A DNA stretch of 64,000 nt from Chrysemys picta bellii (Eukaryota), in contig NC_088794.1 of NCBI RefSeq assembly GCF_011386835.1, positions 11,532,001 to 11,596,000 of the forward strand. Direction: 5' to 3'. Under the pieces are notes generated by a model. The model had not been told where the DNA came from and did no database searches. It saw only the letters and a program-made list of their open reading frames with translations. The position numbers and the translations under genes were made by a program. Shown in pieces: positions 1 through 37,618 of this stretch (positions are counted from its first letter, which is position 1; each line of letters starts with the position of its first letter).

Positions 1-448
1 GGGGTTGGGATGCAGTGAGTGGGAGTGGGGCAGGAGATGCAATGGGTGGATGTGGTGAGGGTGGCAGGGGAGAGATGCAGTGGGGTGGGTGTTTGTTGGG
101 TAGCAGTGGTGGTTGGAGATGCAGTGGAGGGGTTGGGATACAGTGAGTGGGTGTGGGGAGTGGGGTGGGAGATGCAGTGTGGGGGTGTGGGGAGGGAGAT
201 GCAGTGGGTGGATGCGGTGAGGGTGGCAGGGGAGAGATGCAGTGCGGTGGGTGTTTGTGGGGTAGCAGTGATGGCTGGGATGCAGTGAGTGGGTGTAGGG
301 AGTGGGGTAGGAGATGCAGTGGTGGGGAGGTGATGTTGATTAGGAGATGCAGTGGGGTGGGATTGGAGGGTTGGTGGTGAGGGAAATGCAGTGGGGGGGG
401 GGCAGGTGTTCATGCCATAGGACTTACCATCCTGTTCTTTATCTCCAG

Positions 449-3400
449 GTCCTGATTATGATACAAGCCAATGGACTAATGAGAAAGAGAAGCTGGGGCT
501 GGATTTCCCGAACGTACGTAGCAGCCTCCTTTGCCGTTCCCCATGTGTCGCTGGGGAGGACAGGGTCAGAGAGGGAAGTGGTTGGAGACTAGCAGCTTTC
601 ACGGCTGGCTCTGAGGTGGAGCCAGGCCGTTGGCTGGGGAAGGGCTCCCAGCTCTCCAGTGCCCCCTTGGCTGGTGCAGGAGACTCAGGCCTTGCTGTCT
701 TTGCAGCAGCGAGCACGTGGCTGTGCCTAGCCTGAGTGTGATCGTGGTTGTGCATGGCTATAAGGTTAAATGCTAGGCACTGAACAGTGAATCTGGGGCC
801 CTGCTGTCCACCTGCTCCCCCAAGCAGAGTCAAAAAGTGCAGGGCCTGCTCATGAGACACTGAGCTCTGCTCTTTGACCTCCCGCCGACTAGGAGGCACA
901 AGTAGCTTGGTGGCTGCGGTGCCCTCCAAGAGTAGGATAAATGGGTGGGGAGAACTTATCCCCTGACATCCTCTCTTTGCCCTCCCAGCTCCCCTATCTC
1001 ATTGACGGCCAGACCAAGCTCACGCAGAGCAATGCTATCCTCCGCTACGTAGCGCGCAAACACAAGATGGGTGAGTATTGCTGCAAGTCGAAGGCTTGTC
1101 TGCACGGGGAACTTGACTGGAACAGCTCCTCTGGAATAGGTCCCCAGTCCAGAGTAAAAGTGCTGGGCCATTATTCTAGAAGACCTAGGTCATTCCAGAA
1201 TAACTGGGCTGGTCAATTCCCCCCAGTGAAGACAAGCCCTTAGAGGCTAGTTGAGATTTAAACCATGGTTGCTGAGCCTCTCTGCCCCTGTGTGTTTTCT
1301 GACTCCCAGCTGGCGAGAGTGAGGAGGAGATACAGAGAGTGGACATGCTGGAGAACCAGGTGATGGATTTCCGCCTGGCCTTTGCAAGGATCTGCTACAG
1401 CCCTGACTTCGTGAGTGCATCCCTGCTCCCCTGGGGGTGTGGGTCATAGCTGGAGTGCAAGAGATGACTCAGGAGGGTCACATGAGGTTAACAGGTGTAG
1501 ATATAATCCAGAGCTTTACAAGCCTCCATTAATTACCTGGGCAGAAGAGTAGTTATCCCCATTTTACAGAGGTGGGGGAGAGAGAAGTGATGTGACTTGC
1601 CTGAGGTCCCACAGTAAACCAGTAGCAGAGGTAAGATAGAATTTGAGCCCTCCCTAGATTCAGCACTGCCTGTTCCCCCATCCCACGCTGCCTCACAGAC
1701 AGAGAGAGGTGGAATTGCTCAGGGATTATGTGTCAGAGCAGACCAGTCTGTGAAGTCTATTACGGCTCCTCTCTAGCCACAGCCTCTTCCTTCAAAGGAA
1801 GGTGAATAATTTCTATCATGCACCAGACTAGTTCCCTGATGTTGGCATGGGAGGGAGGAGAGTGTCTGGGATGGGAGATCCCTTCAGATGATCAGTTTAT
1901 GCCCCAAAAGTTGGGACTGAATTACCCCCGTCACTGCCTTGGGCCACCTTAGAAAGCCGGAACTCTGAGTTGCTCCGGGGTGGTGGGGATTGCGAGGATT
2001 TGACCCACAGCTCCCTTGCTTCTATTTTCCCTTCTGCAGGAGAAACTGAAGCTGGAGTACTTGGAGCAGCTGCCCGGGAAGCTGAAGCTGTTCTCCCAGT
2101 TCCTGGGGGTCCGGAAGTGGTTTGCTGGGGAGAAGGTATGTCGCTAGACAGGGACTGAGGACATAGCTGCTCCATGTTAAAGAGAGGCCAGAGATGGGAA
2201 GTGCAGATCGGGATGGTTCTGATCTGACGCTCTGCTTATTTTCATTCTAATTTCCAAGCTCACCTATGTTGACTTCCTCGCGTACGACATCCTGGATCAG
2301 CACCGCATGTTCGCACCCAAGTGCCTGGATCAACTAAAGAATCTGAAGGATTTTCTTGACCGATTTGAGGTGAGCTTGGCCCTGACTCCCCTGTGACATG
2401 CTGCTCTCTGGATCTCCAGTTCTGCAGGGTCTGCAGTATGTGACCCTGGGTCAAGTTACTTTTCCCAATTAAGGTTGATAGATGGTTTCCATTCTAAGCC
2501 TTCTGCACCCTTTATCTTGTCAAAACAATAACCCACCTCTTGGTCCTTTTCACAATATATGGAATCGGCGTTCACCTTAAACAGGAGGTGTTCATTATAG
2601 AAGACAATCAACACTAAAGACACACAAACAAGTTTCCACACAGCTCAAGTTCCAGCACTGTCTCCCTTGTGAAGAGCTCCAGACAGGAAACTGGTGAACA
2701 GCACATAGTCATAAGAACATAAGAACATAAGAAAGGCCGTACCGGGTCAGACCAAAGGTCCATCTAACCCAGTATCCTGTCTACCGACAGTGGCCAATGC
2801 CAGGTGCCCCAGAGGGAGTGAACCTAACAGGCAATGATCAAGTGATCTCTCTCCTGCCATCCATCTCCACCCTCTGACAGACAGACAGGCTAGGACACCA
2901 TTCCTTACCCGTCCTGGCTAATAGCCATTAATGGACTTCACCACCATGAATTGATCCGGTTCTCTTTTAAACTCTGTTATAGTCCTAGCTTTCACAACCT
3001 CCTCAGGCAAGGAGTTCCACAAGTTGACTGTGCGCTGCGTGAAGAAGAACTTCCTTTTATTTGTTTTAAACCTGCTGCCTATTAATTTCATTTGATGACC
3101 CCTAGTTCTTGTATTATGGGAATAAGTAAATAACTTTTCCCTCTCCACTTTCTCCACATCACTCATGATTTTATAGACCTCTATCATATCCCCCCTTAGT
3201 CTCCTCTTTTCCAAGCTGAAGAGTCCTAGCCTCTTTAATCTCTCCTCATATGGGACCTGTTCCAAACTCTTAATCATTTTAGTTGCCCTTTTCTGAACCT
3301 TTTCTAGTGCCAGTATATCTTTTTTGAGATGAGGAGATCACATCTGTACGCAGTATTCGAGATGAGGGCGTACCATCGATTTATATAAGGGCAATAATAT

Positions 3401-4725
3401 ATTCTCAGTCTTATTCTCTATCCCCTTTTTAATGATTCCTAACATCCTGTTTGCTTTTTTGACTGCCTCTGCACACTGCGTGGACATTTTCAGAGAACTA
3501 TCCACGATGACTCCAAGATCTTTTTCCTGACTTCTTGTAGCTAAATTAACCCCCATCATATTGTAGGTATAGTTGGGGTTATTTTTTCCAATGTGCATTA
3601 CTTTACATTTATCCACAGTAAATTTCATTTGCCATTTTGTTGCCCAATCACTTAGTTTTGTGAGATCTTTTTGAAGTTCTTCACAGTCTGCTTTGGACTT
3701 AACTATCTTGAGCAGTTTAGTATCATCTGCAAACTTTGCCACCTCACTGTTTATCCCTTTCTCCAGATCATTTATGAATAAGTTGAATAGGATTGGTCCG
3801 AGGACTGACCCTTGGGGAACACCACTAGTTACCACTCTCCATTCTGAGAATTTACCATTAATTCCTACCCTTTGTTCCCTGTCTTTTCACCAGTTCTCAA
3901 TCCATGAAAGGACCTTCCCTTTTATCCCATGACAGCTTAATTTACATAAGAGTCTTTGGTGAGGGACCTTGTCAAAGGCTTTCCGGAAATCTAAGTACAC
4001 TATGTCCACTGGATCCCCCTTGTCCACATGTTTGTTGACCCCTTCAAAGAATTCTAATAGTCACCTAGTAGCTGAATAATATATTGCAAGTGCACATCAT
4101 TACAGTCCTGAATTTCTCAAGCTTGGTTCTTGGGCAGAGGAGATTTTGAAGAGCAGACTGAGTTTGGAACCGGACAAACTGTTTTAGAGAAATGGAGCTT
4201 TGAGAAGTTACAGGACGTCCTGCTTTTAGAAAGTGCTTTATCTGCTCCTAAACCTAGAGCAGCTCGGCAACGTAAGGGCCTGGCTTTCCGAAGTGCCGAG
4301 TGAAATCGAGCGGTGCGGTGAGTGGTCAGCAGCTTTGAAAAATCACATCCTTGGGGCCTGATCCAAAGCCTTTTGAAGTCTGTGTCAAGGCTCCCACTGA
4401 TTTCAGCAAACTTTGGATTGGACTCTAGGTCCTCCAGAAGAACTGGGCCATAGGAATGTCTGATAAGAGGTGGCTGCGTGCCTTTCTGGTTTGCAATGGG
4501 GAGCGATTCCCAAGCAGCTGTTTGGCTGTGGCCCATGCTGAATTTCTGGCGGTGATGATGGGTAGGGGGCATGTGAGGAGCTGATGATGTCTCTTTACGT
4601 TGATGGATCTTCTTTTGCTTTCCCTGTAGGCCCTGGAGAAGATCGCTGCCTACCTGAGTTCTAGCCGCTCCATGAAGACTCCCATTTTCTGGAGAACTGC
4701 CCAATGGAGCAACAAAAAGGAGTAG
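449..4725 (+). CDS. GSTM: Glutathione S-transferase mu, gene B (5'-partial; exons 3-8 in window)
   Basis: Exons 449-513, 989-1070, 1310-1410, 2040-2135, 2259-2369, 4630-4725 have the canonical mu-class sizes (65, 82, 101, 96, 111, 96 nt), GT-AG sites and consistent phases. Translation: [49 protein letters not shown]/...[21 protein letters not shown].../...[14 protein letters not shown]. Exons 1-2 presumably lie left of base 1. Confidence 0.95.
1553..1670. mobile_element. MIR/CORE-SINE-like remnant (similar remnants at ~26370-26600, ~35565-35660, ~52310-52420)
   Basis: ttatccccattttacaga..gtgacttgcctgaggtcccacag resembles the MIR core. Confidence 0.55.
2712..4056 (-). mobile_element. 5'-truncated CR1 LINE (RT C-terminal half, 3' UTR, (TTCTTATG)n tail) in GSTM B intron 7
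   Basis: ORFs with [28 protein letters not shown] and RPHLEYCVQ. Tail cataagaa x3 at 2710-2733. Flanking duplication atagtca at 2705-2711 and 4057-4063. Confidence 0.95.
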
Positions 4726-5909
4726 GCTCAAGTGGAGCTCAGCAAATGTCAAACAACTCTCTTGGCATTGACCCACTACAGCATCTGAGAAGGAGACGGA
4801 GACCCCTGGAACCCCTCTAGCTTGCAAAGTCCCATTACACAGCAAATCAGTAATAGCTGAAATCCGCAAGCCCTGTTGTAATCCTTCCCACTCAGCTAGC
4901 TGCGATTACTGGCTAATGAGAACATTTTGGTGACTGTATAGTCGTCTCAGCTTATTGACTTTCCTGGTTTCTGTTTGTTTTTCAAAAATAGATCTCTAGG
5001 GAGTTCTGATTAGGAGACCCTTAGTTCTACTTTTAAACCTCTTCTGACTTTCAGCATTTATCCCGGCATGCAGGCCAGTTCCTGCTTCCATTGGTGCTCT
5101 TCAGATGGCCAAGTGGCTCTTTGACAAAGGGCTCTGAATTTCAGAGGTGTTGAGCACCTACCACTCCTTTGAGCCCCTGTGCATATGAAAATATAAACAG
5201 AAAGATAATTCTCCCCTCCCCTTAAACCTGCTCTCTCCTGGAGCACCCCACACACACCGGCTTGTGATCACACACGCAGAAAGAAGATCATGTTTCAGAG
5301 GGGACGGAAGATTTCCCTTTTGTGACTAGATATGTAAGAAGTTGGCTAGTTCCTGGGGGCCAGCGTGAGAAAGCCCTGATGTCCTATCCAATGCATAATC
5401 AAGGTACTAATTAAATCACCATCCTCCCCTCCGACAGGACAGCTCAGCCAAGTAGAGGGGAGAGGAAGCTGGATGCACCCAATCAGGTTTGTAAGTGTGC
5501 TGCGCCCTGCAGCCCCTGTTCTGACACAGAGGGCCAGATCCCCAAGAGAACTCAGTCTGGCCCCTCCGTTTAGTGCCTACAGCAGAGCGGAGCTGTCTGG
5601 AAGCTTGGTCCCAAAGCACTGTTGCACACAGCTGAGAGAGCAAGTAATGCAGTGCTTGTATGGGCTGGGAGCAGGTTTAGGGAGACGTAGTCTGGATTTG
5701 TGCAACCGCAAAGAACCCCAGGGCAGTAGTGGAGAGTAGCAGAGAGGGACCCAGTCGTTCCAATGGGGTGGAGGTTTTGAGGCTTATGTAAATCCCTGGC
5801 CTTTCAATCTCTAAAGCCACAGGCCTCTGCTGTGTAAGCTAAAGCAGATCTCCTTTGGCTGGCAGATGTAGTAGGGCCTTTATCTACCTTGTGGTTTCAG
5901 CTACTAGCT

Positions 5910-6351
5910 CAGGGGCGGGCAAACTTTTTGGCCTGAGGGCCGCATCGGGTTTCATAAATTGTATGGAGGGCCGGTTAGGGGAGGGGGTTGTGGCCCGGTC
6001 CCCACCTCCTATCTGCCCCCCTGGGGCCCCTACCCCATCCAACCACCCCTTCTCCCTGTCCCCTGACTGCCCCCAGAACCCCTGCCCCTGACTGCCCCCC
6101 CCCATCCAATCCCTCCTCTCATTCCTGATGCCCACCGGCTTGAGCTGGGCCATGCCATTGCCACGCACAGCTCAGAGACTGGGTCAGACCTGGCTCTGCA
6201 GCTGCGCTGCCCCAGGAGCTCACAGCCGCACCGCGCCGCCCAGAGCATGGTGCTGGCGGAAGAGCAAGAGAGCTGAGGCTGTGGGGGAGGGGGACAGCAG
6301 GGGAGGGGATGGGGCAGGACGGTCCCGTGGGCTGTAGTTTGCCCACCTCTG
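5910..6351. mobile_element. hAT-type MITE (mirrored at ~18146-18588)
   Basis: TIRs caggggcgggcaaact / agtttgcccacctctg; flanks tactagct / tactagag. Confidence 0.8.
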
Positions 6352-7419
6352 TACTAGAGGACACCATCACACATTTGCTGCTTTGTACACAGAGCCAGTA
6401 CATTACACAGTGAGTGCCAGTGGTCATGGCAACGTCTGTGACTATATCTCCCTTGCTGAGCAGCATGTGAGCCGGGGGCTCCCTGTGTTTCTTCCTCCAA
6501 TCTCTTGCAAACTAGGAGTGTTGCCCTTTGTTCCCCACAACGATCATACAACACGGCTTTCCCCTGTGCCTAAACACAAGGGCCAGCTACCCTGACACGA
6601 GCATGGAGAACTGGTGACCCCAGAGGGTGAGGGGCCGATGGGGAGCAGCAGGCTGACAGCACAGGAGAAAACCCGGTGTAATGTGGCTAAGGGGTGGGAT
6701 GGCAGGGGGCCAGAGGAGGTATAGAGGGGAGATGCCCCATATCAGAGCAAGTACAAAGTGATGCTGGTGTGAGGAGGAGAAAACCCTGGAGGACGTAAGT
6801 AGGGCCTGGGCCTTTTGGAAACCCTTGCACGGGGAGGGGGAAGGTATCGATTGCCCACCCAGAGTACTGTTCCTGGAGTACTGTGGTGGAAGGATGCCTG
6901 CTTGGCCCAATCCCCTATTTGCTCTTGCAGCCGATGCTCAGTGTAACCATGGCTGATGCCCGCGGGCAGTGCCCCTCTCAATTTCAGGAACTCTTTTCAT
7001 CTTGCATCTCGTGTTTGCAGCACATGGTAGAGATGTCTCCCCAGCTGGGAAGCAGGGGCCTGATTCTGATCATACCCTGGTGTAAATCAGGAGTAACCCC
7101 ACGGGGCCCCGTTCCTCTCTCACCCAGGTGTAAATCAGGAGTAACTCCATTTAGGTCAGGGGAGCTGCACTGGTGTCAAACTGGGGTGAGTAAGAGGAGA
7201 CTCGGACCCGTTGTTTTCTGGGAGGATGAGCATGAGCTTATTTTTGGATTAAATCTCTTTGCGGTCCCTTTGCTTAGACCAATATCTCCCGTGAGCGGTT
7301 CCAGCCATTTTCCAGCAGGTCCCTCGTCCCTCTCTCTGCACAGGCTCCACCCCAGAGTCCGCCGGGCGGTGCTTCATTTAAAGAGGCACTGCCCGGTTGA
7401 AAACAAAACCCGGGCTAGA

Positions 7420-7960
7420 ACAAATCCGGGGCCCGGCCCGTGTGAATAGCACCTCGCACGCGAAACCGCTTTACCCGGGCACCTTCCCTCCCGCAGCGCC
7501 AACACCCCGCAACTGGGCTGGGCTTTTGGTCGCTTCTCAGGAGTGCATGTGCCCGGCGCTGCAGCGTCCGCCGGGCAAACCTCTGCCCCGCTGGGAGTGT
7601 GTGGAGCGGGGATCGGGGCCTCGCCTAGAGCCGAGCAGCGACACCTGCTTCCCCCGCAATCGCCCGTTCAAATAAAACACCCCTGGGGGCGTGTCTACGG
7701 GTTTGGGCGGCGCGGCCCCTTTAAGACCCCCCTCCCCATTGGGTTGTGCTCGGCAGCCGCTCCCATTGCCGGGCAGGTTATAGAGCAGCCGCCGCGCTCC
7801 AGTCCCGACTCCCCGACAGACGCAGCCGCTGGAGCAGCCGCGTAAAGCAGCAGGAAAAGCAGCGCAGCGCAGCGCACCATGCCGGTGGTTCTCGGGTACT
7901 GGGACATCCGCGGGGTGAGTCCGAGCTGCAGCGCCGGGCACGGGGCGGGGGCTGCTATTT
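7420..7960 (+). promoter_or_regulatory. CpG-island promoter of GSTM A
   Basis: CpG-dense. Inverted CCAAT (attgg, 7738-7742) and TATA-like ttatagag (7778-7785) ~100 nt upstream of the ATG. Confidence 0.7.
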
Positions 7961-10900
7961 TCATTTCCCCCTGGGCCTGACTCTCTAGCCGAGTGGGGTC
8001 ATGTCTCTGGAGGCTGCTGACGCTGGGTGGGGGGGACCCTACCAAATTCATGGCCATGAAGAATGTGTCCTTGACTGTGAAATCGGGTCTTGTCTGTGCT
8101 TTTAACCTCTACTGATTTCACGGGGGACACCAGCGTTCCTCCAATGGGGGGCCCTGACTCAAAAGGGGGCTGCAGGGCGTCACAAGGTAGCTTGAGGGGT
8201 TTGTGATACTGCCACCCTCACTTCTGTGCTGCCTTCAGCGGTGGGTAGCTGGCAAGTGGTGGCTGGTGGCCGGACAACCAGCTCTGAAGGCAGCTCCCCG
8301 CCAGCAGCAGTGCAGAAGTAAGGGTGGCAAGACCATACTGTGCCAGCCTCACTTCTGTGCTACTGACTGGCTCTGAAGAAGTACCACAACCCCCCCCCCC
8401 CCTCCCACCACACACACACACACAATAACCTTCTAACTTCCCCACACACACACACAACTCCTTGTTGGGTCAGGACCCCTACAATTACAGCATGCTGACA
8501 CTTCAGATTTAAATCGTTGAAATCATTAAATTTGCCATTTAAAAAAATCCTAGGACTGTGAAATTGATCAAAATGGGCCATGAATTTGGTTGTTCCCTAT
8601 TGATGGAACCTGCTTGTTAATGATGCCATACAGCCCACCTGCCCCTCCTTGCAGCAAAAGGAGCACGTGGCCCCTGCTGCTTTCCTGCATTGTTTTCAAC
8701 AGAGCCTTCTGCTGTTGCAAGAGTCTCTGTAGAAAGCACCCAGAAAAACAAAATAAGGGTGCCCCTGTGCTTTGGCCCAGGGCGTCTCTAGGGATCTGTA
8801 GGTGGCTCCGGGGCTATGGGACAGGTGTTGGGGAAGTGGCCTGTGTTCATAGGTGGTGAGTTACATGGGCCCATGGTGCCCGTGCTCCATCAATATTTAG
8901 GAACGTGGGCCTGGCTCCACCAATGTTTGGGTTTACCGTGCTTTGGGGAGGCCCCCATGCTTCAGGGGGACATAGGGTCCAGGGCAGCCTGGGGGGTTAG
9001 TGGGGAGCCTGATGCCGGCAGCAGCGCGCGATTTGGCCCCGGCGCACCCCACTGGCTCCTCGCGTTGCCATGGGCAGGTAGAGGGCCAAAGCCCCTGACT
9101 CAAGATTGGAGGTGGGGGGGAATCTCGCTCCATTATCTATTTCCCTTCCCACTCCAAGGGGAAAACGTAGAACAGGGATGGTCCCAAACCACTGGAAAGC
9201 AGAAATGGCCTTACACCTGAGCATGCCATCGCCTGCTCCCATGCACATGGTGCCGCGCACTGTAGCCCTCATGCCTTGCACGGTATCCATGTGGGAAGGG
9301 CTGGATTGCAAAACGGTTACACTTGCAAGCCCTGTGTGCAGCTGGGGGTGGTAGGTTTTGAGGTTTGGCTGGCACTGGGCACCAAACTGCTCTGCCTGCA
9401 CTTGTTCGAGCCTGCCTTGGTGGGGAGCTCATAGCGGTTTTGGGGGAGCTGACGTGAATCTGGAGTTGCTTGCCTCCGGGGGCAGGGTGCTGCTCTGGTG
9501 GTGGTGAGTTCTAATCCAGCTCCTCTCACTGACTATATGTCCGCAGGCAGGACTGTTGGCCTCATGCAGGGTTATTTCCATTGTTTGAGTACTTGATTTG
9601 GCTGGGGCCTGGTCTTCAGGTAATACCCATTGGGCACCCAAAGTTAGAAACCATTCTTTAGAAACTAGATCTTAATCTGTGCCTCAGTTTCCCTACCTGC
9701 AAAGATGAGGTGTGTGATGGAAGGGGTGGGGCAAAGGAGACTGACCTGCCTTTTGTATGGGCTAAGATGTCTAAGCACTTGAGGAGGAGTGCTGTAGTGA
9801 CCCTCACCAGGGAGGGGACTGACGGGTGAAAGAGGAGAAGTCACTGCTCCCTTTCATTGCTGCAACCACAGTGACCCGGCTCCTGAAAGACAAATCACGA
9901 CCTTTGGCAAAGGAATCTCTTGGGGTTGAATTTCCAGGCTGCTTTTGGGGTGGGCGTGGGGGAGGAGGGACGATGAAGCTTGTTCAGTGAACTCCCTTGA
10001 GGCTGAAGAATTACATTAGACCAGGAAGACTCTCACTCCGGCTTGCAGGCTGCCAGTGACTCTTTATCGTGTCTCCTGTGGCTCTTGCAGCACATAATTA
10101 AAATACTGATTTAATTATTAACCAATCAGGATGCTTATGCTATGCTTATGCTAGCCAATTGTAGTTGCTGAATTAATACTTGCACTGTGATTTTGCTGTG
10201 AGAAGAATATAAGCTGTAGATATTTCCTGCCATACTGTTTTAAATATGAATATATAGTACTATAGTAAATGAAATGAGGAGTTCACACCCTTGTGGCTCT
10301 TCTGGGTAAAGCTGATGGTAACTTGACTCCTGTAGCCTGAGGTCGGAATCCCCCTGCTCTGATGCTAATACTTGCAGGCTCTCATGTTGCCCTGGTCTTC
10401 TCCCTGCAGCTTGCCCACTCCATCCGACTGCTGCTGGAATACACGGGCACCGCGTACGAGGACAAGATGTACAGCTGTGGGGAAGGTGAGTGGTGCAGGC
10501 AGGGAGCAAAGCTAGCCCTCCCCGGCTCATTGAGTGGAAAGTGTTCTGAGGGGCCAGGAACGGCTCGTTTGTGTAGGAGCTCTGCTCCCAGCTCTGCGGA
10601 GACACCCCTTTCCCTTGCCAGGCGAAAGGCTCTAGTGAGCCTGCTGGTGGCTGTGAGGGCCTCTTGCCTGGCTGACTTGGACTAGTCACAGCTCTGTGCA
10701 GTCTGAGTCTCCAGGGAGCAAAGGGCTTCCTGGTCCCTACAAGAAATTCTTAGCATGAATCTCCTTCAGTGGAGTGCCATGCATTCTAGAGGGTCATGTG
10801 CTGCCGCATGCTGACCTGGTGTTTGATGGGGTAATGTTTACACTAAGGAAGTAGGGAAGGGATCCCACAGTTCTTGGCTGTTGGACTGGTATCTGACAAA

Positions 10901-24515: not shown

Positions 24516-27500
24516 CACTGGTACCCCACAAACACCCACCGCACTGCATCTCTCCCCTGCCACCCTCACCGCACCCACCGCATCTCCCTCCCCACACCTA
24601 CACACTGCATCTCCAACCCCACTCCCCACACCCACACACTGCATCCCAACCCCTCCACTGCATCTCTAACCAGCAATGCCACCGCACAAACACCCACTCC
24701 TCTGCATCTCTCCCCTGCCACCCACACACTCACTGTGTCCCTTTCCCTCCCATCCTCTTCACCCCCCACCCTACATCAACAGTGACTGGTGGTAGAACTG
24801 GAGATTGAGTCCCCTGCTCTCTCCCTCTCCCCACACCCCAGGAGCTGAGGGGAGAGGGCCCTGGCTCACCTCCAACCAACACTGCTCCAAGTCCAGGGCT
24901 GGAAGAAGACTTAGGTCCCCAGGCTGGCCCCTTTGCACCACTCTAGCAGCAGGAAAGGGCCAGAACCCAGACAGAGCTTCCCACCACCCTTGGACAGCCC
25001 TATCCCTGGGGCAGCAGGTTTGTATAATTTTTGGTGGAGTCTAGAATGGGTCCAAGTGCCCGCCACCACCTGCCTAAGGCTCTGGCAGGGAGTTTGGGTG
25101 CGGGCTCTGGGCTGGGGTAGGGGGTTGGGGTGCAGGAGGGGGTGTGGGCTCTGGGAGGGAGTTTGGGTGCAGAGGGGGATTTGGGCTCTGGGAGAGTTTG
25201 GGTGCAGGCTCAGGGCTGGGGCAGGGGTGCGGGAGAGGGTGAGGGGTCTGGTGCTTACCTCAGGCAGCTCCCGAAAGTGACCCGCACACCCCTCTGGCAG
25301 CGGCTCCTAGGAGGGGAGGCCAGGGGTCTCTGTGCATCGCTGCCCACAAGCACCGCCCCCACAGTTCCCGGCCAATGGAAGCTGCAGAGTCGGTGCTCGG
25401 GGCAGGGGCAGCACGTGGAGACCACCACCCCGGGGCCGTGGGGCCATGCCAGCTGCTTCCAGGAGTGGCAAGGACCGAGGCCAGGCAGGAAGGTGCCTTA
25501 GCCCCTCTACACTGCCAGTGGTGGTGGCGGCAGCGGCCGGGGCCCTCCAGGCTCTTTTAAATCACCTGGGGGCAGCAGGCAGGGCCGGAGGAGAGACCCA
25601 GCCCCGAACACTGGTGGAGCATGGACACCACGGACCCTGAATATTCCTGGAGCACGGGCACCATAGACCCATACAACTCGGCACCCGTGCCCTATACCAC
25701 ACTTCTGCTCAGCTCCTGGCATGGGGCATGCCTGTTCTGACATAGCAGAGCAGCCACTCAAGGCCGTGGTAGCTTACAGCACCCCCCTGGGCTGCTCTAA
25801 CACTGGGCCAGGCCACGTTGAAAGCCACCTGTGTTCCCCCTCCCATTCCTGAGCTGTGCCATTCCGGACATGCAGCTTGGCATCTGGGCCTAGAAAAAAC
25901 AGGGAAAAGCCTCAGCACATCCAAGCATGAAGGAGCAGCGCTGCAGCAATCGATACTTAACGGCCACAATTTTCACCACTGGCCTCTGATGTTAGATGCC
26001 AAACCTGGCCACGGGCGCCTGATTTTCAGAAGCACCGAGCACCGCCTGCTCCCATCGAAATCCCTTGGAGTTGCAGCTGCTCGGTGCCCCTGAGGAAAGC
26101 CAAGCTGCTCATTTACGTGGCTAACATCAAGCCCCCACATCTGATCCTTTCGGCCAACACTCCCACCCACGCTGGCCTCTCGTTCCCAGACGGTGCCGTT
26201 TACCGACCTTGCAGAAACATCATGAAACGGCTCAGTGCCAAGGCTAGACACCATGAGCACAATATGGTGTTTATTACTGGAGTGCCTGAGGCCGGCTGAG
26301 AACAAGGTGCTGGGTGCCAGACAAACACAGAATCAAAGACCGTTCCTGCCGGGAAGCCCGTCTCTAATGAGATGGTCCAGTAGTTAAGAGCATGAACCTG
26401 GGGATTTGGGAGACTGAAGTTCAAATCTCTGCTCTGCCATACACTTCCTGGGTTCCCGTGGGGAAATCACGAAGCCGCTCAGAGCCTGAGTTCCCCAGCT
26501 GTAAAACCGGGATCCGAGACTAACCGCACTTTCCTACCACAACTGGGGGATTGTGAGGCTAAATACAGTAAAAACTGTGAGGTGCTCAGATGCTACCACC
26601 TATCCTAGGGGCCTATATGGCTATGCTTTGTGTCTGGATTTAACCGCTTCCCTGCTGGCCCGGGTCCCCTTTACAATCAGGCAGGGCGCACGCAAACCGC
26701 AATGATATGAAATCCTCCCACTTCCGTTTGACACAGGGTGATAAGCAAAGCGTCAGTGGCCATGTGCAATCTGGCTTCGTTTATCAGTGCTCAAAGGTCT
26801 GTTTACCTGCAGGTGCCATGCTGGCTATGAAATAAACGTGCGGCAAATCCATCCCCACTAGTGCAGCCTGAACTGGGATATAAGCCCGGGGTCCTCCAAC
26901 CCCGGGGACACAGGGTCTGTTTGCAGTGCAATCTAGGGGTGTAATTGCAGCACATGTAGACACACCCGAGCCAGCTTTGATCTGGATAGTGCAGGTACCG
27001 ATAGCAGTGAAGCTGTGTCAGCACGGGCCAGCTGCCCAAGTACATACCCGGGGTCCCAGGTGAACTTGTAGAGCCGGCACTGCTATTGGCATGCAAGCTA
27101 GCTAGAGGCACATGCTGCAGTTACACCTCCAACTGCAATGTAGACAGACCCTGAGAGGATTTACTGGGAGGGCAGGGAGAGTATAAACCCAGCAGAATCA
27201 GGGGGGAGGGGCAGGGCACGAGTTCCTGAGAATACTCATAGGCCCCCAGGGGCCACTGACTCTGATACAAACCTAAGGTCTTATCCTCAGCTTCTGTAAA
27301 TCCAGGCAGATCCATTTACACCAGCTGAGAATCTCCCTCTCCCCAGCCATGAAAGGCAGGAATTGTAATTCTTACGGTCTTTAATCAAGACAAATGATGC
27401 TATTGCTTGGGACAAGCACCTCCTGGTATAGGTTCCAGCCAGGGTCCCGAGTCCCAGCCAGAGGATCGGCTCTGGGATTGTCCGCAGTATAAGGACAATC

Positions 27501-30500
27501 TGCCGGAACTGGAGTTCCTTGTCCAGTGCACCGCTAGTTCTTTCCCATAAAGAGAGTACAGTCTAGTGGTTAGAGCACAGGCTTGGTGTGAGGACACCTG
27601 GGTTCCACTCCCAGCTCTGTCACTCACTCATCGGGGCTTGGTCATCACTGCAAGAAAGGGTGTTTTTACACTGCGATAGCTGTCTCGATGTAAAATTCTG
27701 GTGGGGCCAAGGCACTGCGGTTCTTACCTTGATGTGGCTCAGTGGTTCTCAACCGCAGACCGCTTGCAGCCCAATCAGCACAGAGTTGCGGCCCATGTGC
27801 CATCCTCAGGGCCATACAGGTAGCACTGGGATGTGGTACACAATGATAAACAGGATGAGAACCACTGATGTAGCCGATTGATAGGGTAGACCTCAACTAG
27901 CTGCATCCAGGTAAAAACTCCAGTCTCTTGTCTCCACCATGAGTTTACAGAGAGAGAAATAACTACAAACATCTTTTTGCAGTGAGGACAAAGCCGGGGT
28001 GACCTTAACGCAAAGTCACTCACCCTTTCTGAGTCTCAGTCGAAAGGGGAATTTTACTTTCGTGGTGCCCTGGGAAGTTGTGAGGTAGAATTTTATCGTG
28101 ATTCTAAAGGGATAGAAATGTGCAATGTCATTGTAAAGCTGCACTTTCTGCTCGGGGAGAACGTGTTGCTTTGAGACAGCTGGGGTTTCTTATCGCTCAC
28201 TGTGACAAAGAGCAGCCCCGTGACCTTCAGAATCATATAACCAAATCTCGGGGTGCATGACTCAGCAAAAAACCCCAACAAGGTGGGAAATTCGTCCAAG
28301 GCAAGAGAGTCACAGAGTCTCTCTGCAGCCATGGAAGAGTTAAGCCAAGCCCCTGGGAGAGCAGAGATAGGAAGTGGCTGTTACAAAGCTGCCTTCTAGA
28401 AACAGGCTGGCCAGGGTTGAGCAATGCTCCCAGCTCCCATGGACTCCAACTGGCGTTGGGCCCCTCAAAGTCTGTCCCTTCCAGCAGCAGAAAGGCCAGC
28501 TCCGGACAGAGGGCACTGTCTTAATATAGGGCAGATCCCTGCTCTCGCTGAAAGCAATGGGAGTTCTGCTCTCAACTGCCACAGGAGCAGGACCGGGCCC
28601 TGTAAGCAACAGCAAATAGAAGCCGATACAGGCCCGGTAGAACCAGACCTTGGAGGAGGAGTGACCTAAGGCAGGAGGGAGAAGAGGGTCTGAACCTCCT
28701 CCCCATTAATGCAGAGGGGCTGTACAGCCGGCCCTCCGGAACTGACCTCGCTAGCTGACTAATCCACACACCCCATCCCCAGACAGAGAGAAAAAGGCAG
28801 TTTCTAACACAGCTGCTGAAACCTGAGCACCTCCAGGGAGCTCATTGCTAACAAAAAGAACAGGAGTACTTGTGGCACCTTAGAGACTAACAAATTTAAC
28901 AGCGAGTCTAAGGTTACAGCCTGCTCAGAACTAGTTTCTACCACAGCCCTGCAGAGTTGTCCTGGTTAATTTCAGGGGTGGCAGCAAAAGCTGCTGTTCT
29001 CCTGCCTGGTGTGATCTGCAAACTGCAACTTGATAGATTTTTGCAGTGGAAAAAATCTGGCCCGAGTCAATGATTTCCTTGCAATTTCCAGCTGCGATCT
29101 GGGCTTGATCCAACATCAGCCTCTCTATTGCCTTCAACAAGCTTAGACCCTAATTGAAGGGCCTGCTCTAAGGTGACTCAGGAGCCAAGATGCCATGTGA
29201 ACAAGGGCACCATTCAGTGCTGTTAAAGGACCTGGACACTTATTGCTATTTAACACTGTTGAGCATAGATCTTAAAACACCCCTTAGCCCTAACGATAAC
29301 AGCGCACCCCTCTCTCACAATATGAGGTTGGTATAGACCCAACCACTTCTGTATCCCTCCCCAACACCAGTTCTGATCTCCACACAGGTTCCCTGCCAAG
29401 ACTGCAAAAGACAATGCACCTTGCAAGTGCCCGTCTCACGCTCCACAGGGCAAGGCAGCCCGGGGCGCAATCTCCACCCATGACACCTTACCTTCCCCAC
29501 TGGGGCTGTATTGCTTGTCCTCATAGGGAGTGTCCGTGTATTCCAACAGCAGTCGGATGGCGTGAGCAAGCTGAAAAGAGGAGCACGAGAGCATTTATAT
29601 CCCAGGATCCCTCCAGTTCCATTGGGCGAGCCCAGAGCTTGCCCATCTCCGAGAAAGCAAGATAAATTGACCTTCCTCCCAATTCTGCTCACAGCTGCTG
29701 GAGCCCAGGACTATACACAGATCATGCGTGATGGCTTCTACCTTAGCCAACGCACCACACAGGGGATTGAACCAGGGAACCTCCATCGCTCAGACTGGAA
29801 GGCCAGAAGGGACCATCATGATAGTCTAGTCTGACTTCCTGCACATCGCAGGACACAGAACCTCCCCCACCCACTCCTCTAATAGACCCCTAGCCTCTGG
29901 CTGAGTAACTGAACTCCTCAAATCATGATTTAAAGACTTCAAATTACCAAGAATCCACCATTGACACTAGTTTAAGCTTGCAAGTGACCCGCGCTGCAGA
30001 GGAAGGTAAAAAAAACAAAAACAAAAAAAACGCAGGGTCTCTGCTAATCTGACCTGGGGGGAAATTCCTTCCTGCCCCCAAATATGGTGATCTGTTGAAC
30101 CCTGAGTATGTGGGCAAGACTCACCAGTCAGACACCTGGGAAAGAATCCTCTGGGGTAACTCAGAGCCCTCCCCATCGAGTGTCCCGTCTCCAGCCATTG
30201 GGGATTTTTGCTACTAGCAGTCACAGACGGGCCACATGTCATTGTAGCCCGATGCATCCTAGGACTGCATTAGCCTTTTTCACAGCCACATCAGGTCAGG
30301 GGCTCCTAGGCATCCTGTGATCAAGCAATTTACTCAGGTCTTTTGGCTTTTCTGTTGCTTCCAACAGATACATCCCCATCTTATCGCAAATATTCCTGTT
30401 GTTAGTGCCTACATTCATGACTCTGCACTTTGCACTATTAAATTTCATCCCATTTCTATTCCTCCAGTTTTCCAGGTTCTCCAGATCTTCCTGTGCGATA

Positions 30501-31826
30501 TTCCGGTCCTCCTCCATATTGGCAATACCTCCCGCTTTTTGTGCCAAGGTCATGAATGAAAACGTTAAATAAGATTGGACCGAAGACCGATCCCTCAGTG
30601 GAACGCCCCTAGTAACCTCCCTCCAGCCTGGCAGTTCACCTTTCAGTGTGACCTGTTCTAATCTCCCCTTTAACCAGTTCTTTATCCACCTTTCAGTTCT
30701 CATATTAATCCCCATCTTTCTCCAATTTAATGAATAATTTCCCATGTGGGACTGTAAAAGCACAAGCTAAAGTTCTAACAGACTCAAATCCACCATAGAG
30801 CGCACACCATATGTGCGAGGGGAGACCGAGAACACACCTGCCCCACGGCATTACACATGCTCGTGGGAGTTTCAGTAGCCTGAGTTAGGAACCCTGCATT
30901 GCACTGTGGACCCAAAGAGGGCTTTTCTTGCTGAGACCACGCGGCAACTAATGCAACTAATGCAAAATTGCAATGGGGCTCCTGACCTCCAAGCCACCAG
31001 CCACTGGGGGGACTACACCCACCAATGACATGCCTCCCCTCCCCCCAGACATCTGCTGTTGGGAAACAAAACTTTTACAGAGTTACAAATAAAGTGCCCA
31101 GTCAGGGCCTGGCAGTGAGACGGGTCCATCATAGTTTCACTGCAGAAAGGGGCAGGGGCCAGGAGTGTGTAGGGCTTTCTGCAGGGACGCATCATGGGCA
31201 TTGGCTGCCGGGCAGGGACGACTTTCCCCCAGCCCCACCCTTGGGGAAGGGATAAAGGTGGGGGACGGACACTTTCACGTGATGGGGCCCTGCTCTCCTA
31301 GGGCTCACAGCTGAATTGTCAACTGGCCTGCTTGCGAGAGCCATCCCCCTACCCCAGGCAAATCTTGGCTACCATGACATGTGACCCCAAGCAAACCTGA
31401 TAGAGCCAACCCATACATTCCCCTACAGAGACCTCCCCCACAGCTGGGAGGCCGCCTGCCCCACTCCTGCACCCTCCCCCATAGCTAGGGCTGCCTGCCC
31501 CACTCCTGCACCCTTCCCCCATAGCTGGAGGGCCGCCTGCCCCTCTCCTGCAGTCCCGCCCCTCCCCCATAGCTGGGAGGCTGTGTGCCCCACTCCTGCA
31601 CCCTTCCCCCATAGCTGGGGGGCCGCCTGCCCCTCTCCTGCACCCTCCCCTATAGCTAGGGCTGCCTGCCCCTCTCCTGCCGCCCCTCCCCCATAGCTGG
31701 GGGGCCGCCTGCCCCACTCCTTTACCCCTCCCCCATAGGTGGGGGGCCGCCTGCCCCACTCCGCGCTGGCCCGGCGCTGCCCGCACTCACCCCGCGGACG
31801 TCCCAGTACCCTAGAGTGACCCCCAT
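19753..31826 (-). CDS. GSTM: Glutathione S-transferase mu, gene C (complete, 221 aa; inverted near-identical paralogue of B)
   Basis: Minus-strand exons: 31826-31791, 29570-29492 (79 nt), 23955-23891, 23414-23333, 23093-22993, 22364-22269, 22145-22035, 19848-19753 (666 nt, open, all GT-AG). Translation: [47 protein letters not shown]...[11 protein letters not shown]...[14 protein letters not shown]. Confidence 0.96.
20420..21702 (+). mobile_element. Same CR1 insertion in GSTM C intron 7, with ~52 bp internal deletion
   Basis: Same RT motifs and the same tgactat flanks (20413-20419, 21703-21709). The deletion at ~20977 removes the [18 protein letters not shown]-coding stretch. Confidence 0.95.
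24050..24770. repeat. C-rich minisatellite (CACTGCATC core, ~142-bp higher-order unit) in GSTM C intron 2; mirrored at 1-400
   Basis: actcactgcatccc recurs at 24111, 24253 and 24395. Confidence 0.9.
25006..25690. mobile_element. Non-autonomous DNA transposon (related fragment at ~8848-9130)
   Basis: Imperfect TIRs ggggcagcaggtttgtat / atacaactcggcaccc with a G-rich internal array. Confidence 0.65.
26912..27152. mobile_element. Palindromic GTCTACAC-type MITE
   Basis: cagggtctgt...gcagtgca / ctgcaatgtagacagaccctg termini. Confidence 0.65.
27740..27867. mobile_element. Short hAT (Charlie-like) MITE
   Basis: TIRs cagtggttctcaacc / ggatgagaaccactg; 8-bp flanks atgtggct / atgtagcc. Confidence 0.8.
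28257..28271 (+). promoter_or_regulatory. Consensus ARE / NF-E2-Nrf2 site in GSTM C intron 2
   Basis: ATGACTCAGCAAAAA is a full match to RTGAYnnnGCRwwww. Motif match only. Confidence 0.45.
28853..28897 (+). mobile_element. Penelope-like terminal fragment (second one at 39445-39481, minus)
   Basis: aaaagaacaggagtacttgtggcaccttagagactaacaaattt resembles the reptile Penelope terminal motif as I recall it; not database-checked. Confidence 0.5.
29785..30765 (-). mobile_element. Degenerate CR1 fragment in GSTM C intron 1
   Basis: Decayed RT ([20 protein letters not shown]) plus CR1 3' UTR (gaagggaccatcatgatagtctagtctgac). Confidence 0.8.
31430..31760. repeat. Minisatellite in GSTM C intron 1
   Basis: About 7 units of ccccatagctgggaggccgcctgcccc(a/t)ctcctgcaccct. 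Confidence 0.85.
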
Positions 31827-32100
31827 GCTGCCCCTGCGCTCCGGTCTCGCCGCGGTTCGATGCGCTCGAGTGGGGCTGCGGGGAGCGGAGATCCGAGCTT
31901 CCGCCCTGGAATCCGGTTACTTGCCTGTCAGGCCAAACTCGCTTCCCCAGTTCCTGGGCGATCGCGGGGGGCGGATCCTGAGCGCTGCGGACCCCACCTG
32001 TTAACCCTGCCCTGGCTGTCTGCACTCCTGCAGCCCCGCAGACCCCTCGCCTGTGCCCCCCAGCCCCTGCCTGCCTCCCGGGGGGACCGACCCCCCACTA
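31770..32100 (-). promoter_or_regulatory. CpG-island, apparently TATA-less promoter of GSTM C
   Basis: CpG-dense block around exon 1 with a GC box (ggggcgg, ~31967). Confidence 0.6.
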
Positions 32101-32849
32101 TCTCTGGGGGCCTTGGAGGTTAATTTAGCTCATTGCTGAGCTGGCTGCTCCCTGCAGTGTTATGCCCTGGTGCTAGCCAACCTGCGGAACTCCCTGCAGC
32201 AGGACGGCGCTCTCTCTCCATCATGTACTGGGCGGTCAGTGGGGCAGTGTCTGTTGGGGGGAGGGGTTGACTTGGCAGGACTCTGACCTGTTGTGACTGA
32301 CCTTTCCTTTCCTGGTCACCTCGGCCCCTTCATTCACACCCTGCCCATCCGGCTTTGGGCAGTAGCTTTGCTCGGATCAGCTGGGTGCAGAAAATAGAGT
32401 CTCAGGAGGCAGCTCTGGTGACCAAACCTGCAAAGTCTCTTACAGGCCAAATCTGGGCTTTCTGGGCCAGAGCGTAGCAGGAATGCTTGGCATGCACAAG
32501 CCAAGTTGGCTCGGCAGGATCTGGCAGGCCACCCTGGATCGGGGCAGAGTTTTCCCCTCTCTGCCCGCCCCTATGTTTCCACCCAGGGTGGGAGCTGGCC
32601 AGAGATACCAACCCCTCACACCCATTGTACGCATTGTTGGAGGGTTTGTTTGTGGCTCTGGCATCCATAACCACTGCCCCCTTTCCTATCACAGACAGGG
32701 GGACAGTGGGGAGACTGGGACCAGAGAAGAGGGGGCACTGCAGGCACTAGGTCCTTACCTCCTGCTGAAAAGGGCCTTAGTGTAGCGGTCGAAGGAATAA
32801 GGTGGTTTGGAGCCCCTGAGACGGCTTTTTGTTACTTGTTCATTTCTGT

Positions 32850-32990
32850 TGGGTCCGTATTGAAGGTGTGGGCGCACCAGGGATTCATATAGAGGCATTA
32901 TGATATTTTCTGTTTTATTATCTATCCCTTTCCTAATGGTTCCCAACATTGTGTTCACTTTTTTCACTGCTGCTGCACATTGAGTTATGA
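32850..32990 (-). mobile_element. Short CR1 ORF2 fragment at the duplication junction
   Basis: Encodes QCAAAVKKVNTMLGTIRKGIDNKTENIIMPLYESLVRPHLQY. Confidence 0.85.
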
Positions 32991-32992
32991 CC

Positions 32993-34521
32993 GCTTCAGT
33001 GAAGCAAGAGCGGGTCCTTGTATGTGGATCGGGGCAATGGGCCAGTCTCCAGTCTGCCAAGGTACAAGGTAGTATCCGGGAGCTGGTTCTGGATTCCTAA
33101 CTTTGGCCTGGGCCAGGGCCAGAGCAGAGAGCAGCAATGGGGCTGCTCTAACCTGTGGCAGGAGGCAACAGTCCCTAAAGGATTATATTACAACTGGGGA
33201 TGTGCTCTGGCCACTCCTGCCCTGGGGACTGGAGGGAGGAGGTACAGGAGCCAACTGTGCACTCAGGGGATCACCACTATTCAGTGCTGGGGGAAACCCT
33301 AGCTAGATGAGGGTGTGGCCACTCCTTGAGCAGCACAAAGGAAGTAGGGCAGAAAACATCCCACCATGCCAGCAGGTATAACTGGTTCCTCAGGGACTTG
33401 CTAGACATCCCACTGATCAGACTCCTGACTGGGGGATGTGGAGGACCCCCTTTGGTGTGGCCCAGAAGAGGCGTCATGTTCATGTTTCAGGGGGTTGAGG
33501 CTGTGTTGTGAGGTGGTTTGGGAAGCAGACTGTCTCCCCTCTGCTCAGGGCTCTTCATCTGCTCTCTCCTTTCTCTCCCGCCCCCCCAGGCCCTGGAGAA
33601 GGTCGCAGCCTACATGAGCTCTAGCCGCTTCATGAAGACTCCCGTCAACAACAGGATGGCCAAATGAAGCAACCAGAAGAAGTAGATCTGTGTGGAAGGG
33701 AGGGGCTGGAGAGGAATAATCCAGAGCCCCCACTTGCTGTTTGTGTACGGACTCCCTCAGATCAGATGTTGTGAGGGGGTGGACAGTTGAAGATGTTAAG
33801 TGGCAGCTTCAGTGAATTGCTCTGTGGAACAATCACTAACCGTGTGTAGTGACCCTACTCGGAAATGACCAGCCAATAAACGTTTAGTAATTGCACAATG
33901 GCTCCCTCGTGCTGAGTTGCCGTAGCCTCCCTGGAGGAAACCAGCCTCTCCAGTGCTGCCTCTTCCCCGGTCTGTTCAGTTAACCGAGCTGGGAATAGCC
34001 AAGTACCCAGCACCACATCACATCCCCTACAGGGCATCAAGACCAAATCCTGCTTTGGCTTTGATGCCTCTGCAGTTGTCAGTGGAGTGGCGCAGGTGGA
34101 ACTTCCCCCAACCCCTGGTCGTGTAGACTGCTGCTGTTGATGTACCTCCCTTGGTGGCTGGGGTGAACCAGACTAACAGCATCAGCCTGAGACTCAGGTG
34201 GTGCTGGTCAGTGTTGCTTAGTGGATTTAGAGGGCTGCTGTTACTGTAGATTCCCTTCAAGGGAAGAGGCTCTGGCCTGTTTCCCATTCCATCCTGGGTG
34301 GTGCTTAAAAGCCCTGTCTCCTGGCAACCAATTACAGGTACTTTCCTTGGGTGCCCTACCCTGATGACCCTGGCCTGTGGGGGAGTGATGCTCCAGGCTG
34401 GGTTGCCATGGCCCTGGCAACTCAAGGACTCCCTCCTCCCCCGCCAGGAATCGAGCCGCACTCCGGCCGTGTTCGCCGGGCTTGGGTCCGGCCCAGAGCC
34501 CCTTGGCGGCCGGAGCCGAAG
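32993..34521 (+). repeat. Direct repeat copy 2 (carries orphan exon 8)
   Basis: Same sequence as 15529-17041. Begins immediately after a CR1 fragment and runs on into the SLC43A3 intron. Confidence 0.93.
33590..33685 (+). pseudogene. Orphan copy of GSTM gene A exon 8 with nonsense codon
   Basis: Acceptor ccccag at 33584-33589, then ALEKVAAYMSSSRFMKTPVNNRMAK followed by TGA at 33665-33667 (TGG in gene A). AATAAA retained at 33875-33880. No + strand GSTM exons 1-7 were found between gene A and this exon. Confidence 0.92.

Positions 34522-37586: not shown

Positions 37587-37618
<32 letters not shown>

What the first reader, a model, noticed from the sequence alone, without database searches (positions are those of the whole stretch)
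1..34521. GSTM gene C and the orphan exon appear to come from one template-switch rearrangement (X-Y-Z-invX-Z)
Seen: X (gene B unit, ending at 7589) recurs inverted from 17078. Y (7590-15528) is single copy. Z (15529-17041) recurs directly at 32993-34521, right after the 5' end of gene C. Both duplicate pairs look similarly diverged (~3-4% by eye). Junction 1 falls in a GC-rich MITE-like tract with ~25 nt of unassigned sequence (17053-17077). Junction 2 abuts a CR1 fragment. Known: duplication-normal-inverted-duplication layouts are the signature of FoSTeS/MMBIR. Inference: two template switches created a complete new detoxification gene and a dead exon in one event.
Basis: partly seen in the sequence, partly recalled or inferred. 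Interest (0 to 1): 0.7.

Follow-up and report, generated by a model that had tools for sequence, protein, structure and literature searches.

The report
Inverted GST gene copy, painted turtle
A 16-kb block holding a whole mu-class glutathione transferase gene was copied upside-down into a turtle gene cluster, along with a 1.5-kb repeat that left a dead exon; this is a clean fixed example of a rearrangement type known mostly from human patients, not a new kind of event.

Summary
The layout is real. X (1-7591) recurs inverted at 17075-24381. Y (7592-15528) is single copy. Z (15529 to about 17048) recurs directly at 32993 to about 34529.

Gene content:
- X holds exons 3-8 of gene B.
- Y and Z hold a complete second gene, whose exon 8 lies in Z.
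- The inverted copy and the 8.6 kb beyond it hold a complete, intact 8-exon gene C. All eight exon peptides equal RefSeq XP_065447421.1 of Chrysemys picta bellii.
- Z' holds an orphan exon 8 with TGG>TGA.

The two repeat pairs are equally diverged in substitutions: 2.21% against 2.43% (p=0.62).

Junction 1 has no long homology. It has 14-26 unassigned bases, and parts of these resemble the nearby end of X in the opposite orientation (suggestive only). Junction 2 abuts a high-copy repeat that looks CR1-like.

The arrangement equals the "DUP-NML-INV/DUP" structure of human complex rearrangements, so one event with serial template switching is the most economical reading.

Three things were not tested. 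The parental end of X lies left of the window. No read or contig bridged either junction.

Verdict: observation confirmed, interpretation partly supported, a new member of a known kind.

The parts
1..7591 (+). X: visible part of the gene B unit. It holds exons 3-8 (449-513, 989-1070, 1310-1410, 2040-2135, 2259-2369, 4630-4725) and 2.9 kb of 3' flank. It runs off the left edge of the window.
   Evidence: Self-BLAST; exon map from tblastn with turtle GSTM proteins and splice context.
7592..15528 (+). Y: single-copy segment with exons 1-7 of the middle mu-class GST gene (7879-7914, 10410-10485, 13527-13591, 13806-13887, 13990-14090, 14493-14588, 14686-14796). The Y/Z breakpoint lies in its intron 7.
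   Evidence: Pfam GST_N hit on 13794-14195.
15529..17048 (+). Z: distal part of intron 7, exon 8 (16127-16222) and the 3' flank of the middle gene. Homology to Z' may run on to 17060.
   Evidence: Alignments.
17049..17074 (.). Junction 1 tract of 14-26 nt with no clear parent. It includes an 11-nt tandem duplication (17032-17053) and two short pieces (17056-17065, 17068-17078) that resemble X 7572-7581 and 7554-7564 in direct orientation.
   Evidence: 10 of 3000 shuffles and 4 of 128 GC-matched control windows reach the observed match.
17075..24381 (-). Inverted copy of X, with gene C exons 8-3 (19753-19848, 22035-22145, 22269-22364, 22993-23093, 23333-23414, 23891-23955).
24382..32992 (-). 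Rest of the inverted unit, presumed to copy gene B's 5' part, which is unseen. It holds an intron 2 minisatellite (24002-24741), gene C exon 2 (29492-29570), exon 1 (31791-31826), an intron 1 42-bp tandem repeat (31432-31762) and 1.17 kb of 5' flank. The flank ends in a high-copy CR1-like fragment (about 32758-32992).
   Evidence: A Malaclemys alternative first exon maps to 32443-32500. Repeat depth.
32993..34529 (+). Z': direct copy of Z with an orphan exon 8 (33590-33685) carrying TGG>TGA at 33665-33667. It has 67 bp (34118-34184) that Z lacks.
   Evidence: Relatives' contigs keep the 67 bp and read G at 33667.
34530..38092 (+). W: single-copy continuation. It starts with a GC-rich 32-bp tandem repeat and a high-copy repeat (34623-34823), followed by exons that look like the 3' half of SLC43A3.
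Evidence: Pfam gave no hit, so the SLC43A3 label rests on that note and my recollection of the protein.

Best explanation
In the painted-turtle lineage, one complex rearrangement inserted an inverted copy of the whole gene B unit just downstream of the neighbouring mu-class GST gene. The unit is about 16 kb: the gene, about 1.2 kb of 5' flank and 2.9 kb of 3' flank. The same event re-copied the last 1.5 kb before the insertion point (Z).

The result is X-Y-Z-invX-Z'-W. It carries a new intact gene (C) on the opposite strand and a stranded copy of exon 8 that has since gained a stop codon.

The most likely mechanism is serial template switching during replication or break-induced repair (FoSTeS/MMBIR):
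1. Synthesis ran to the distal end of Z.
2. It then jumped to the distal end of X on the other strand, probably with one or two very short extra switches.
3. It copied X backwards to its proximal end.
4. It then jumped to the proximal end of Z and carried on.

Shown: the layout, the breakpoints that are visible, equal divergence of the two pairs, an intact gene C and a dead exon. Inferred: that it was a single event, the replicative mechanism, and the extent of X beyond the window.
For: - Layout and orientation.
- Junction 1 joins the distal ends of X and Z, and junction 2 uses the proximal end of Z. This is the defining geometry of DUP-NML-INV/DUP, in the variant with the proximal segment inverted between two direct copies of the distal one (PMC6902434).
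- Divergence is 2.21% for X and 2.43% for Z (Fisher p=0.62). 39% of equal-sized windows of X are at least as diverged as Z.
- The joined ends share no long homology or repeat.
- Junction 1 has a 14-26 nt insertion with pieces resembling X's last 40 nt in the opposite orientation (10/3000 shuffles, 4/128 control windows).
- Gene C is intact and matches RefSeq XP_065447421.1 in all 8 exon peptides.
- B and C differ at 8 of 551 coding bases, 5 synonymous and 3 not.
- B and C share exon-8 residues that the Malaclemys, Emys and Terrapene proteins of the same cluster lack, which fits a lineage-specific duplication.
- The sequence up to at least 32500 corresponds to the 5' region of the Malaclemys relative.
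Against: - The parental proximal end of X is outside the window, so neither junction 2 nor the length of X can be verified.
- No listed contig of four related runs bridges junction 2, because a high-copy repeat lies beside it.
- Divergence along X is uneven: 0.3-6% per 300 bp, index of dispersion 2.7. Gene conversion between the arms is likely, which weakens 'equal age' as a test.
- With the GC-rich tail included, Z is 3.0-3.5% diverged.
- Contigs of the relatives are closer to Z' than to Z, an asymmetry that a simple clock does not predict.
- The templated-insertion signal is only moderately significant.
Confidence: 0.6

Rival explanations
1. An inversion with duplicated ends, followed by a flip. 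The whole X-Y-Z block was first inverted with X and Z duplicated at its ends (X-invZ-invY-invX-Z', a dupINVdup made by staggered breaks or by template switching). Later recombination between the two inverted X copies turned the Y-Z spacer back to its present orientation.
For: This route gives exactly the same two junction sequences. PMC6902434 states that three structures satisfy the same two junctions. The inverted arms are at least 7.6 kb long, 97.8% alike and only 9.5 kb apart, which makes them good substrates for recombination. The patchy divergence along X suggests exchange between the arms.
Against: It needs one more step than the direct route. A 16-kb stagger is long for the staggered-break version. 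Nothing in the window requires it.
Confidence: 0.15
2. Two or more separate events. For example, a small tandem duplication of Z came first and an inverted copy of X was later inserted exactly at its midpoint, or the insertion came first and the Z copy second.
For: Mu-class GST clusters are known to change repeatedly by duplication and deletion (PMC5918908, seen by title and abstract only). With the GC-rich tail included, Z looks a little more diverged than X (3.5% against 2.2%, p=0.005).
Against: It needs the second event to hit the boundary of the first to the base. Clean Z and X have the same divergence. The excess in the tail is CpG decay: 7 of 11 sites in the Z tail and 8 of 10 in the last 200 bp of X.
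Confidence: 0.1
3. An old head-to-head or tail-to-tail pair of paralogues was made similar by large-scale gene conversion, so gene C is not new.
For: Divergence is uneven along X, with blocks of 0.3-1% beside blocks of 3-6%.
Against: Homology covers introns and intergenic DNA continuously for at least 7.6 kb and stops sharply at a point flanked by the Z duplication. Conversion would not create Z' or the orphan exon. For several other turtles (Mauremys, Chelonia, Natator, Chelydra) the cluster listings show one 'GST 2-like' and one 'Mu 1-like' protein with adjacent accession numbers. This is weak evidence.
Confidence: 0.07
4. Assembly artefact: a misjoin at the CR1-like repeat or in the GC-rich tract created a false inverted copy.
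For: Both junctions lie in or beside repetitive or GC-rich sequence. I could not span them with independent reads.
Against: The copies differ by 2.2%, far above the 0.48% heterozygosity reported for the likely source animal. That assembly used ~14-kb HiFi reads, which exceed the 0.1-1.5 kb repeats at the junctions (bioRxiv 10.1101/2025.04.01.646645; that this is the source assembly is my inference). RefSeq annotates gene C as a separate protein. In four related runs, contig k-mer depth over 30.7-32.9 kb is about 1.6-1.8 times that over W and is not explained by GC. This is only a weak hint that the region is two-copy.
Confidence: 0.05

Closest known systems
DUP-NML-INV/DUP complex genomic rearrangements at human disease loci (e.g. 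PLP1 at Xq22), attributed to FoSTeS/MMBIR (PMC6902434)
   Same: There are two duplicated segments with a copy-neutral segment between them. One junction joins the two distal ends and the other joins the two proximal ends. The proximal segment lies inverted between two direct copies of the distal one. The visible junction has no long homology and a small insertion.
   Different: This case is fixed, or at least assembled, in a turtle genome and about 2% diverged, not de novo in a patient. It is far smaller (16 kb, 8 kb and 1.5 kb, against hundreds of kb to Mb). In the human cases, oppositely oriented LINE or Alu pairs mediated one switch; no such pair is visible here, though the X side of junction 2 is unseen. 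Here the event produced an intact extra gene.
dupINVdup (paired-duplication inversions) and inversions with duplicated breakpoints in Drosophila (staggered-break model); named from my own knowledge, not read here
   Same: The same two junction types; duplicated sequence at both ends of an inverted block.
   Different: In those cases the middle segment is inverted and both duplicated pairs are inverted repeats. Here Y is not inverted and Z/Z' are direct repeats, so a further flip would be needed.
Mu-class GST cluster evolution in primates (PMC5918908)
   Same: The same gene family, expanding and contracting by local structural change.
   Different: That work concerns duplication, deletion and conversion among the family's repeats (abstract only). 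The turtle event is an inverted, non-homologous insertion with a flanking duplication.

Membership tests
DUP-NML-INV/DUP rearrangement (FoSTeS/MMBIR class) | Two separate duplicated segments with a single-copy segment between them | tested here: met
   X and Z each occur twice and Y once.
DUP-NML-INV/DUP rearrangement (FoSTeS/MMBIR class) | [quoted passage not shown] | tested here: met
   Z's end (17048-17060) is joined to the reverse complement of X's end (7591) at 17075.
DUP-NML-INV/DUP rearrangement (FoSTeS/MMBIR class) | The other junction joins the proximal ends of the two segments | tested here: inconclusive
   The proximal end of Z (15529) is used at 32993. The proximal end of parental X lies left of the window.
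DUP-NML-INV/DUP rearrangement (FoSTeS/MMBIR class) | Junctions with microhomology or short, possibly templated insertions, not long homology | tested here: inconclusive
   Junction 1 has no long homology. Its 14-26 nt insertion has a suggestive match to nearby X. About 2-13% later change blurs the microhomology. Junction 2 is not testable.
DUP-NML-INV/DUP rearrangement (FoSTeS/MMBIR class) | Both junctions made in one event | tested here: inconclusive
   Divergence is equal at 2.21% and 2.43%, p=0.62. This is consistent with one event but is not proof. No intermediate or ancestral allele was seen.
Mu-class glutathione S-transferase (gene C) | Eight-exon mu-class gene structure with an open frame and canonical splice sites | tested here: met
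   Exons of 36, 79, 65, 82, 101, 96, 111 and 96 nt, all with AG/GT. There are no stops.
Mu-class glutathione S-transferase (gene C) | Sequence membership (GST_N and GST_C domains, close kin named mu class) | tested here: met
   All 8 exon peptides are identical to XP_065447421.1. That protein's cluster representative, P0107, carries PF02798, PF14497 and PF00043. The N-terminal GYW motif with the catalytic tyrosine is present (its role is from general knowledge).
Mu-class glutathione S-transferase (gene C) | Expression and enzyme activity | not testable with these tools
   No RNA run was among the holders.

The most novel reading that the evidence does not exclude
The rearrangement may still be structurally unstable or polymorphic in Chrysemys. 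The 16-kb inverted arms would flip the Y-Z spacer back and forth and exchange sequence. Some painted-turtle populations might keep the ancestral X-Y-Z-W allele. One hint: in a run that the tool groups under the same species label as the likely source (I take it for conspecific; names were coded), a 2679-nt contig joins a Z'-like start of Z to 2454 unlike letters. If so, both the 'before' and 'after' alleles of a replication-based complex rearrangement that made a working gene could be read in one living species.
Probability: 0.12. Interest if true: 0.6.

Novelty: new member of a known kind. Interest (0 to 1): 0.4.

Why it matters
Complex duplications with an inverted segment are well documented as fresh disease mutations in people. 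Resolved cases that became fixed and produced a complete, apparently constrained new gene are fewer, to my knowledge.

Here all but one of the breakpoint ends are readable to within a few bases. The extra gene keeps its promoter-side flank, and the by-product (a stranded last exon) shows how such events scatter dead gene pieces.

The locus also sets up long inverted repeats around a working detoxification gene. That predicts recurrent inversion and gene conversion, which could be tested in turtle populations.

It does not change what is known about the mechanism.

Tried and rejected
1. Fetching the orthologous loci of Malaclemys and other turtles with the look-up of encoding contigs.
2. Spanning junction 2 with public runs.
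   - Only contigs of four related organisms could be laid, and they break at the high-copy repeat at 32886-32992.
   - Contigs that begin matching exactly at 32993 and run on for 291-2454 unlike letters are what the Y-Z copy must look like. They therefore neither support nor refute junction 2.
3. Copy number from contig depth. The ratios W: 30.7-32.9 kb: Z' are about 1: 1.6-1.8: 2.3-4 in all four runs and are not explained by GC. The tool warns that depth is not copy number, so I keep this only as a hint.
4. Repeat-mediated switching (opposed LINE pairs, as in the human cases). No homology beyond 11 nt exists between the joined ends.
5. Error-prone synthesis as the cause of the high divergence next to junction 1. 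Rejected, because most differences there are at CpG sites.
6. Confirming 'CR1'. Pfam gave only a weak RVT_1 hit (E=0.004, below cut-off) on the other fragment at 30299-30766 and nothing at the junction. The Atlas gave nothing above 0.87.
It was redone from coordinates.
8. The spliced gene models were never sent to a search tool. Exons were compared one by one. Exons 3-8 of B and C were joined only inside a local script to count codon differences.
9. The big representative-protein search was not used. The family was already clear.
Full report
**What is there.**
- X: 1-7591 matches the reverse complement of 24381-17075. The match is interrupted only by a 175-bp segment present in X (7028-7202) and by small indels.
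- Z: 15529-16891 matches 32993-34429 in direct orientation. Homology picks up again at 16956-17048, matching 34437-34529.
- Y: 7592-15528 has no second copy.
- There are no N runs in the window.

**Genes.** Stop-free segments with mu-class GST motifs were mapped by tblastn with turtle proteins found by one word search, and splice sites were checked. The map is:
- Gene B, + strand: exons 3-8 at 449-4725. Exons 1-2 lie left of the window.
- A middle gene, + strand: exons 1-7 in Y, and exon 8 at 16127-16222 inside Z.
- Gene C, - strand: exon 8 at 19753-19848 back to exon 2 at 29492-29570 and exon 1 at 31791-31826. All have AG/GT sites and the frame is 221 codons.
- An orphan exon 8 at 33590-33685 in Z'. 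It differs from the parental exon at three bases, one of which turns Trp into a stop (33665-33667).

The Y/Z breakpoint lies in intron 7 of the middle gene, which is why Z' holds only the last exon.

All eight exon peptides of gene C occur exactly in RefSeq XP_065447421.1, 'glutathione S-transferase 2-like' of Chrysemys picta bellii. The window is therefore painted turtle or something indistinguishable from it, and gene C is already annotated.

**Divergence.**
- X (401-7591, minisatellite left out): 153 mismatches in 6910 aligned bases, 2.21% (95% CI 1.88-2.59).
- Clean Z (15529-16891): 33 in 1360, 2.43% (95% CI 1.68-3.39).
- Fisher p=0.62, and 39% of equal-sized windows within X are at least as diverged as Z.
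- Including the last 86 bp of Z (12.8% different) raises Z to 3.0% (44/1446). The uncleaned alignment gave 3.5% and an apparent difference (p=0.005).
- That tail and the last 200 bp of X (5%) are CpG-rich, and most differences there are at CpG sites (7 of 11 and 8 of 10).
- Divergence along X is patchy, at 1 to 18 mismatches per 300 bp with an index of dispersion of 2.7. This points to gene conversion between the inverted arms or to uneven constraint. 'Equal age' is therefore consistent with the data but is not a sharp test.
- B and C differ at 8 of 551 coding bases, 5 synonymous and 3 not. That is mild evidence that both copies remain constrained.

**Junction 1.**
- Z homology is solid to 17048 and may extend to 17060.
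- The inverted X starts at 17075, which corresponds to X 7591.
- The 14-26 nt in between include an 11-nt tandem duplication.
- The ends that were joined share nothing longer than 11 nt, so the join was not mediated by a repeat pair.
- Two pieces of the tract (17056-17065 and 17068-17078) match X 7572-7581 and 7554-7564 with one mismatch each. They are in direct orientation, opposite to the inverted copy that follows.
- Only 10 of 3000 shuffles and 4 of 128 GC-matched control windows do as well.
- This looks like the short templated insertions reported at replication-based junctions, but I rate it suggestive only.

**Junction 2.**
- The Z side is exact at 15529/32993.
- The other side is a fragment of a very high-copy repeat, with depth of 5x10^4 to 5x10^5 in four runs for the bin 32814-33014.
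- Its reading frame on the minus strand recalls the C-terminal part of CR1 ORF2. I could not confirm that class.
- The parental sequence is outside the window, so microhomology cannot be assessed.

**Is 24382-32992 a copy of gene B's 5' part?** This is not directly testable. Three indirect points bear on it:
- The region holds exons 1 and 2 of the B/C type and 1.17 kb of 5' flank.
- An alternative first exon of the related Malaclemys gene maps to 32443-32500, so it is genuine gene-upstream sequence of this lineage.
- In four related runs, contig k-mer depth over 30.7-32.9 kb is about 1.6-1.8 times that of W and is not explained by GC. This is a hint only.

**Relatives.**
- The read search returned only contig sets of six coded organisms. 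I laid four of them on 30000-36000.
- They differ from the window by about 0.9-2.6%.
- No listed contig bridges 32992/32993, because the contigs stop at the repeat.
- In three runs a contig starts matching exactly at 32993 and continues for 291, 402 or 2454 unlike letters. That is what the Y-Z copy would look like, so it decides nothing.
- All four runs read G at 33667 (no stop) and keep the 67 bp at 34118-34184 that Z lacks. The stop is thus derived in Z' and the deletion is derived in Z.
- These contigs are closer to Z' (0.9-2.0%) than to Z, which I cannot explain with a simple clock.
- At the protein level, B and C share exon-8 residues that the Malaclemys, Emys and Terrapene members of the same cluster lack. 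This fits a duplication after those genera split off.

**Comparison with what is known.**
- The order X-Y-Z-invX-Z' is exactly one of the three structures that Bahrambeigi et al. give for DUP-NML-INV/DUP rearrangements. One junction joins the distal ends, the other joins the proximal ends, and the proximal segment lies inverted between two direct copies of the distal one. The authors attribute these to iterative template switching (PMC6902434).
- They also note that the same two junctions fit a structure in which the whole block is inverted.
- That gives the main rival here: an inversion with duplicated ends, followed by recombination between the inverted X copies.
- Separate events, conversion of an old pair and misassembly are each less likely, for the reasons listed under the rival explanations.
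- The likely source assembly was built from ~14-kb HiFi reads of an animal with 0.48% heterozygosity (bioRxiv 10.1101/2025.04.01.646645). That argues against an artefact. The paper mentions neither glutathione nor GST.

**Verdict.** One complex event is the most economical history (confidence about 0.6, or about 0.75 if the flip variant is counted as the same initial event). A replicative mechanism is inferred from geometry, lack of homology and a suggestive templated insertion. This is a new, neat member of a known class of rearrangement, of moderate interest.

Noticed in passing
window 34870-38090 (+): Open segments that read like the C-terminal half of the transporter SLC43A3 follow directly after Z'. 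No N-terminal half is in the window. Pfam gave no hit on three of these segments.
   Followed up: partly
window 44222-45041 and 58195-59082; 39856-43984 and 53107-57131: There is a second set of repeats further right. One is a direct pair about 0.8 kb long at 96.4-97.6% identity, close to the identity of the X and Z pairs. The other is an inverted pair about 4 kb long at 76-81%.
   Followed up: no
proteins P0115 (Terrapene) and P0087 (Chelydra): Two database models join exons 1-6 of the 'GST 2-like' type to exons 7-8 of the 'Mu 1-like' type. These are either read-through annotation across neighbouring genes or real chimeric transcripts.
   Followed up: no
window 7028-7202: A 175-bp segment is present in X but absent from the inverted copy. 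It holds an internal 22-nt near-repeat and looks like a small interspersed element inserted (or deleted) after the duplication.
   Followed up: no
window 1-400 and 24002-24741; 31432-31762: There are G-rich minisatellites in intron 2 of genes B and C (units of about 34, 81 and 142 bp, with copy number differing between the two genes). A 42-bp tandem repeat lies in intron 1 of gene C.
   Followed up: no
window 32993-34429, against contigs of four related runs: At sites where Z and Z' differ, the relatives mostly carry the Z' state, so Z seems to have changed about three times as much as Z'. In one run two variants coexist at 33810-33999, one with a 12-bp deletion seen in neither window copy. 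This hints at more than two Z-like copies in those genomes.
   Followed up: partly
window 16127 and 33590: The acceptor before the functional exon 8 in Z is AAG, while the orphan copy has the stronger CAG.
   Followed up: no
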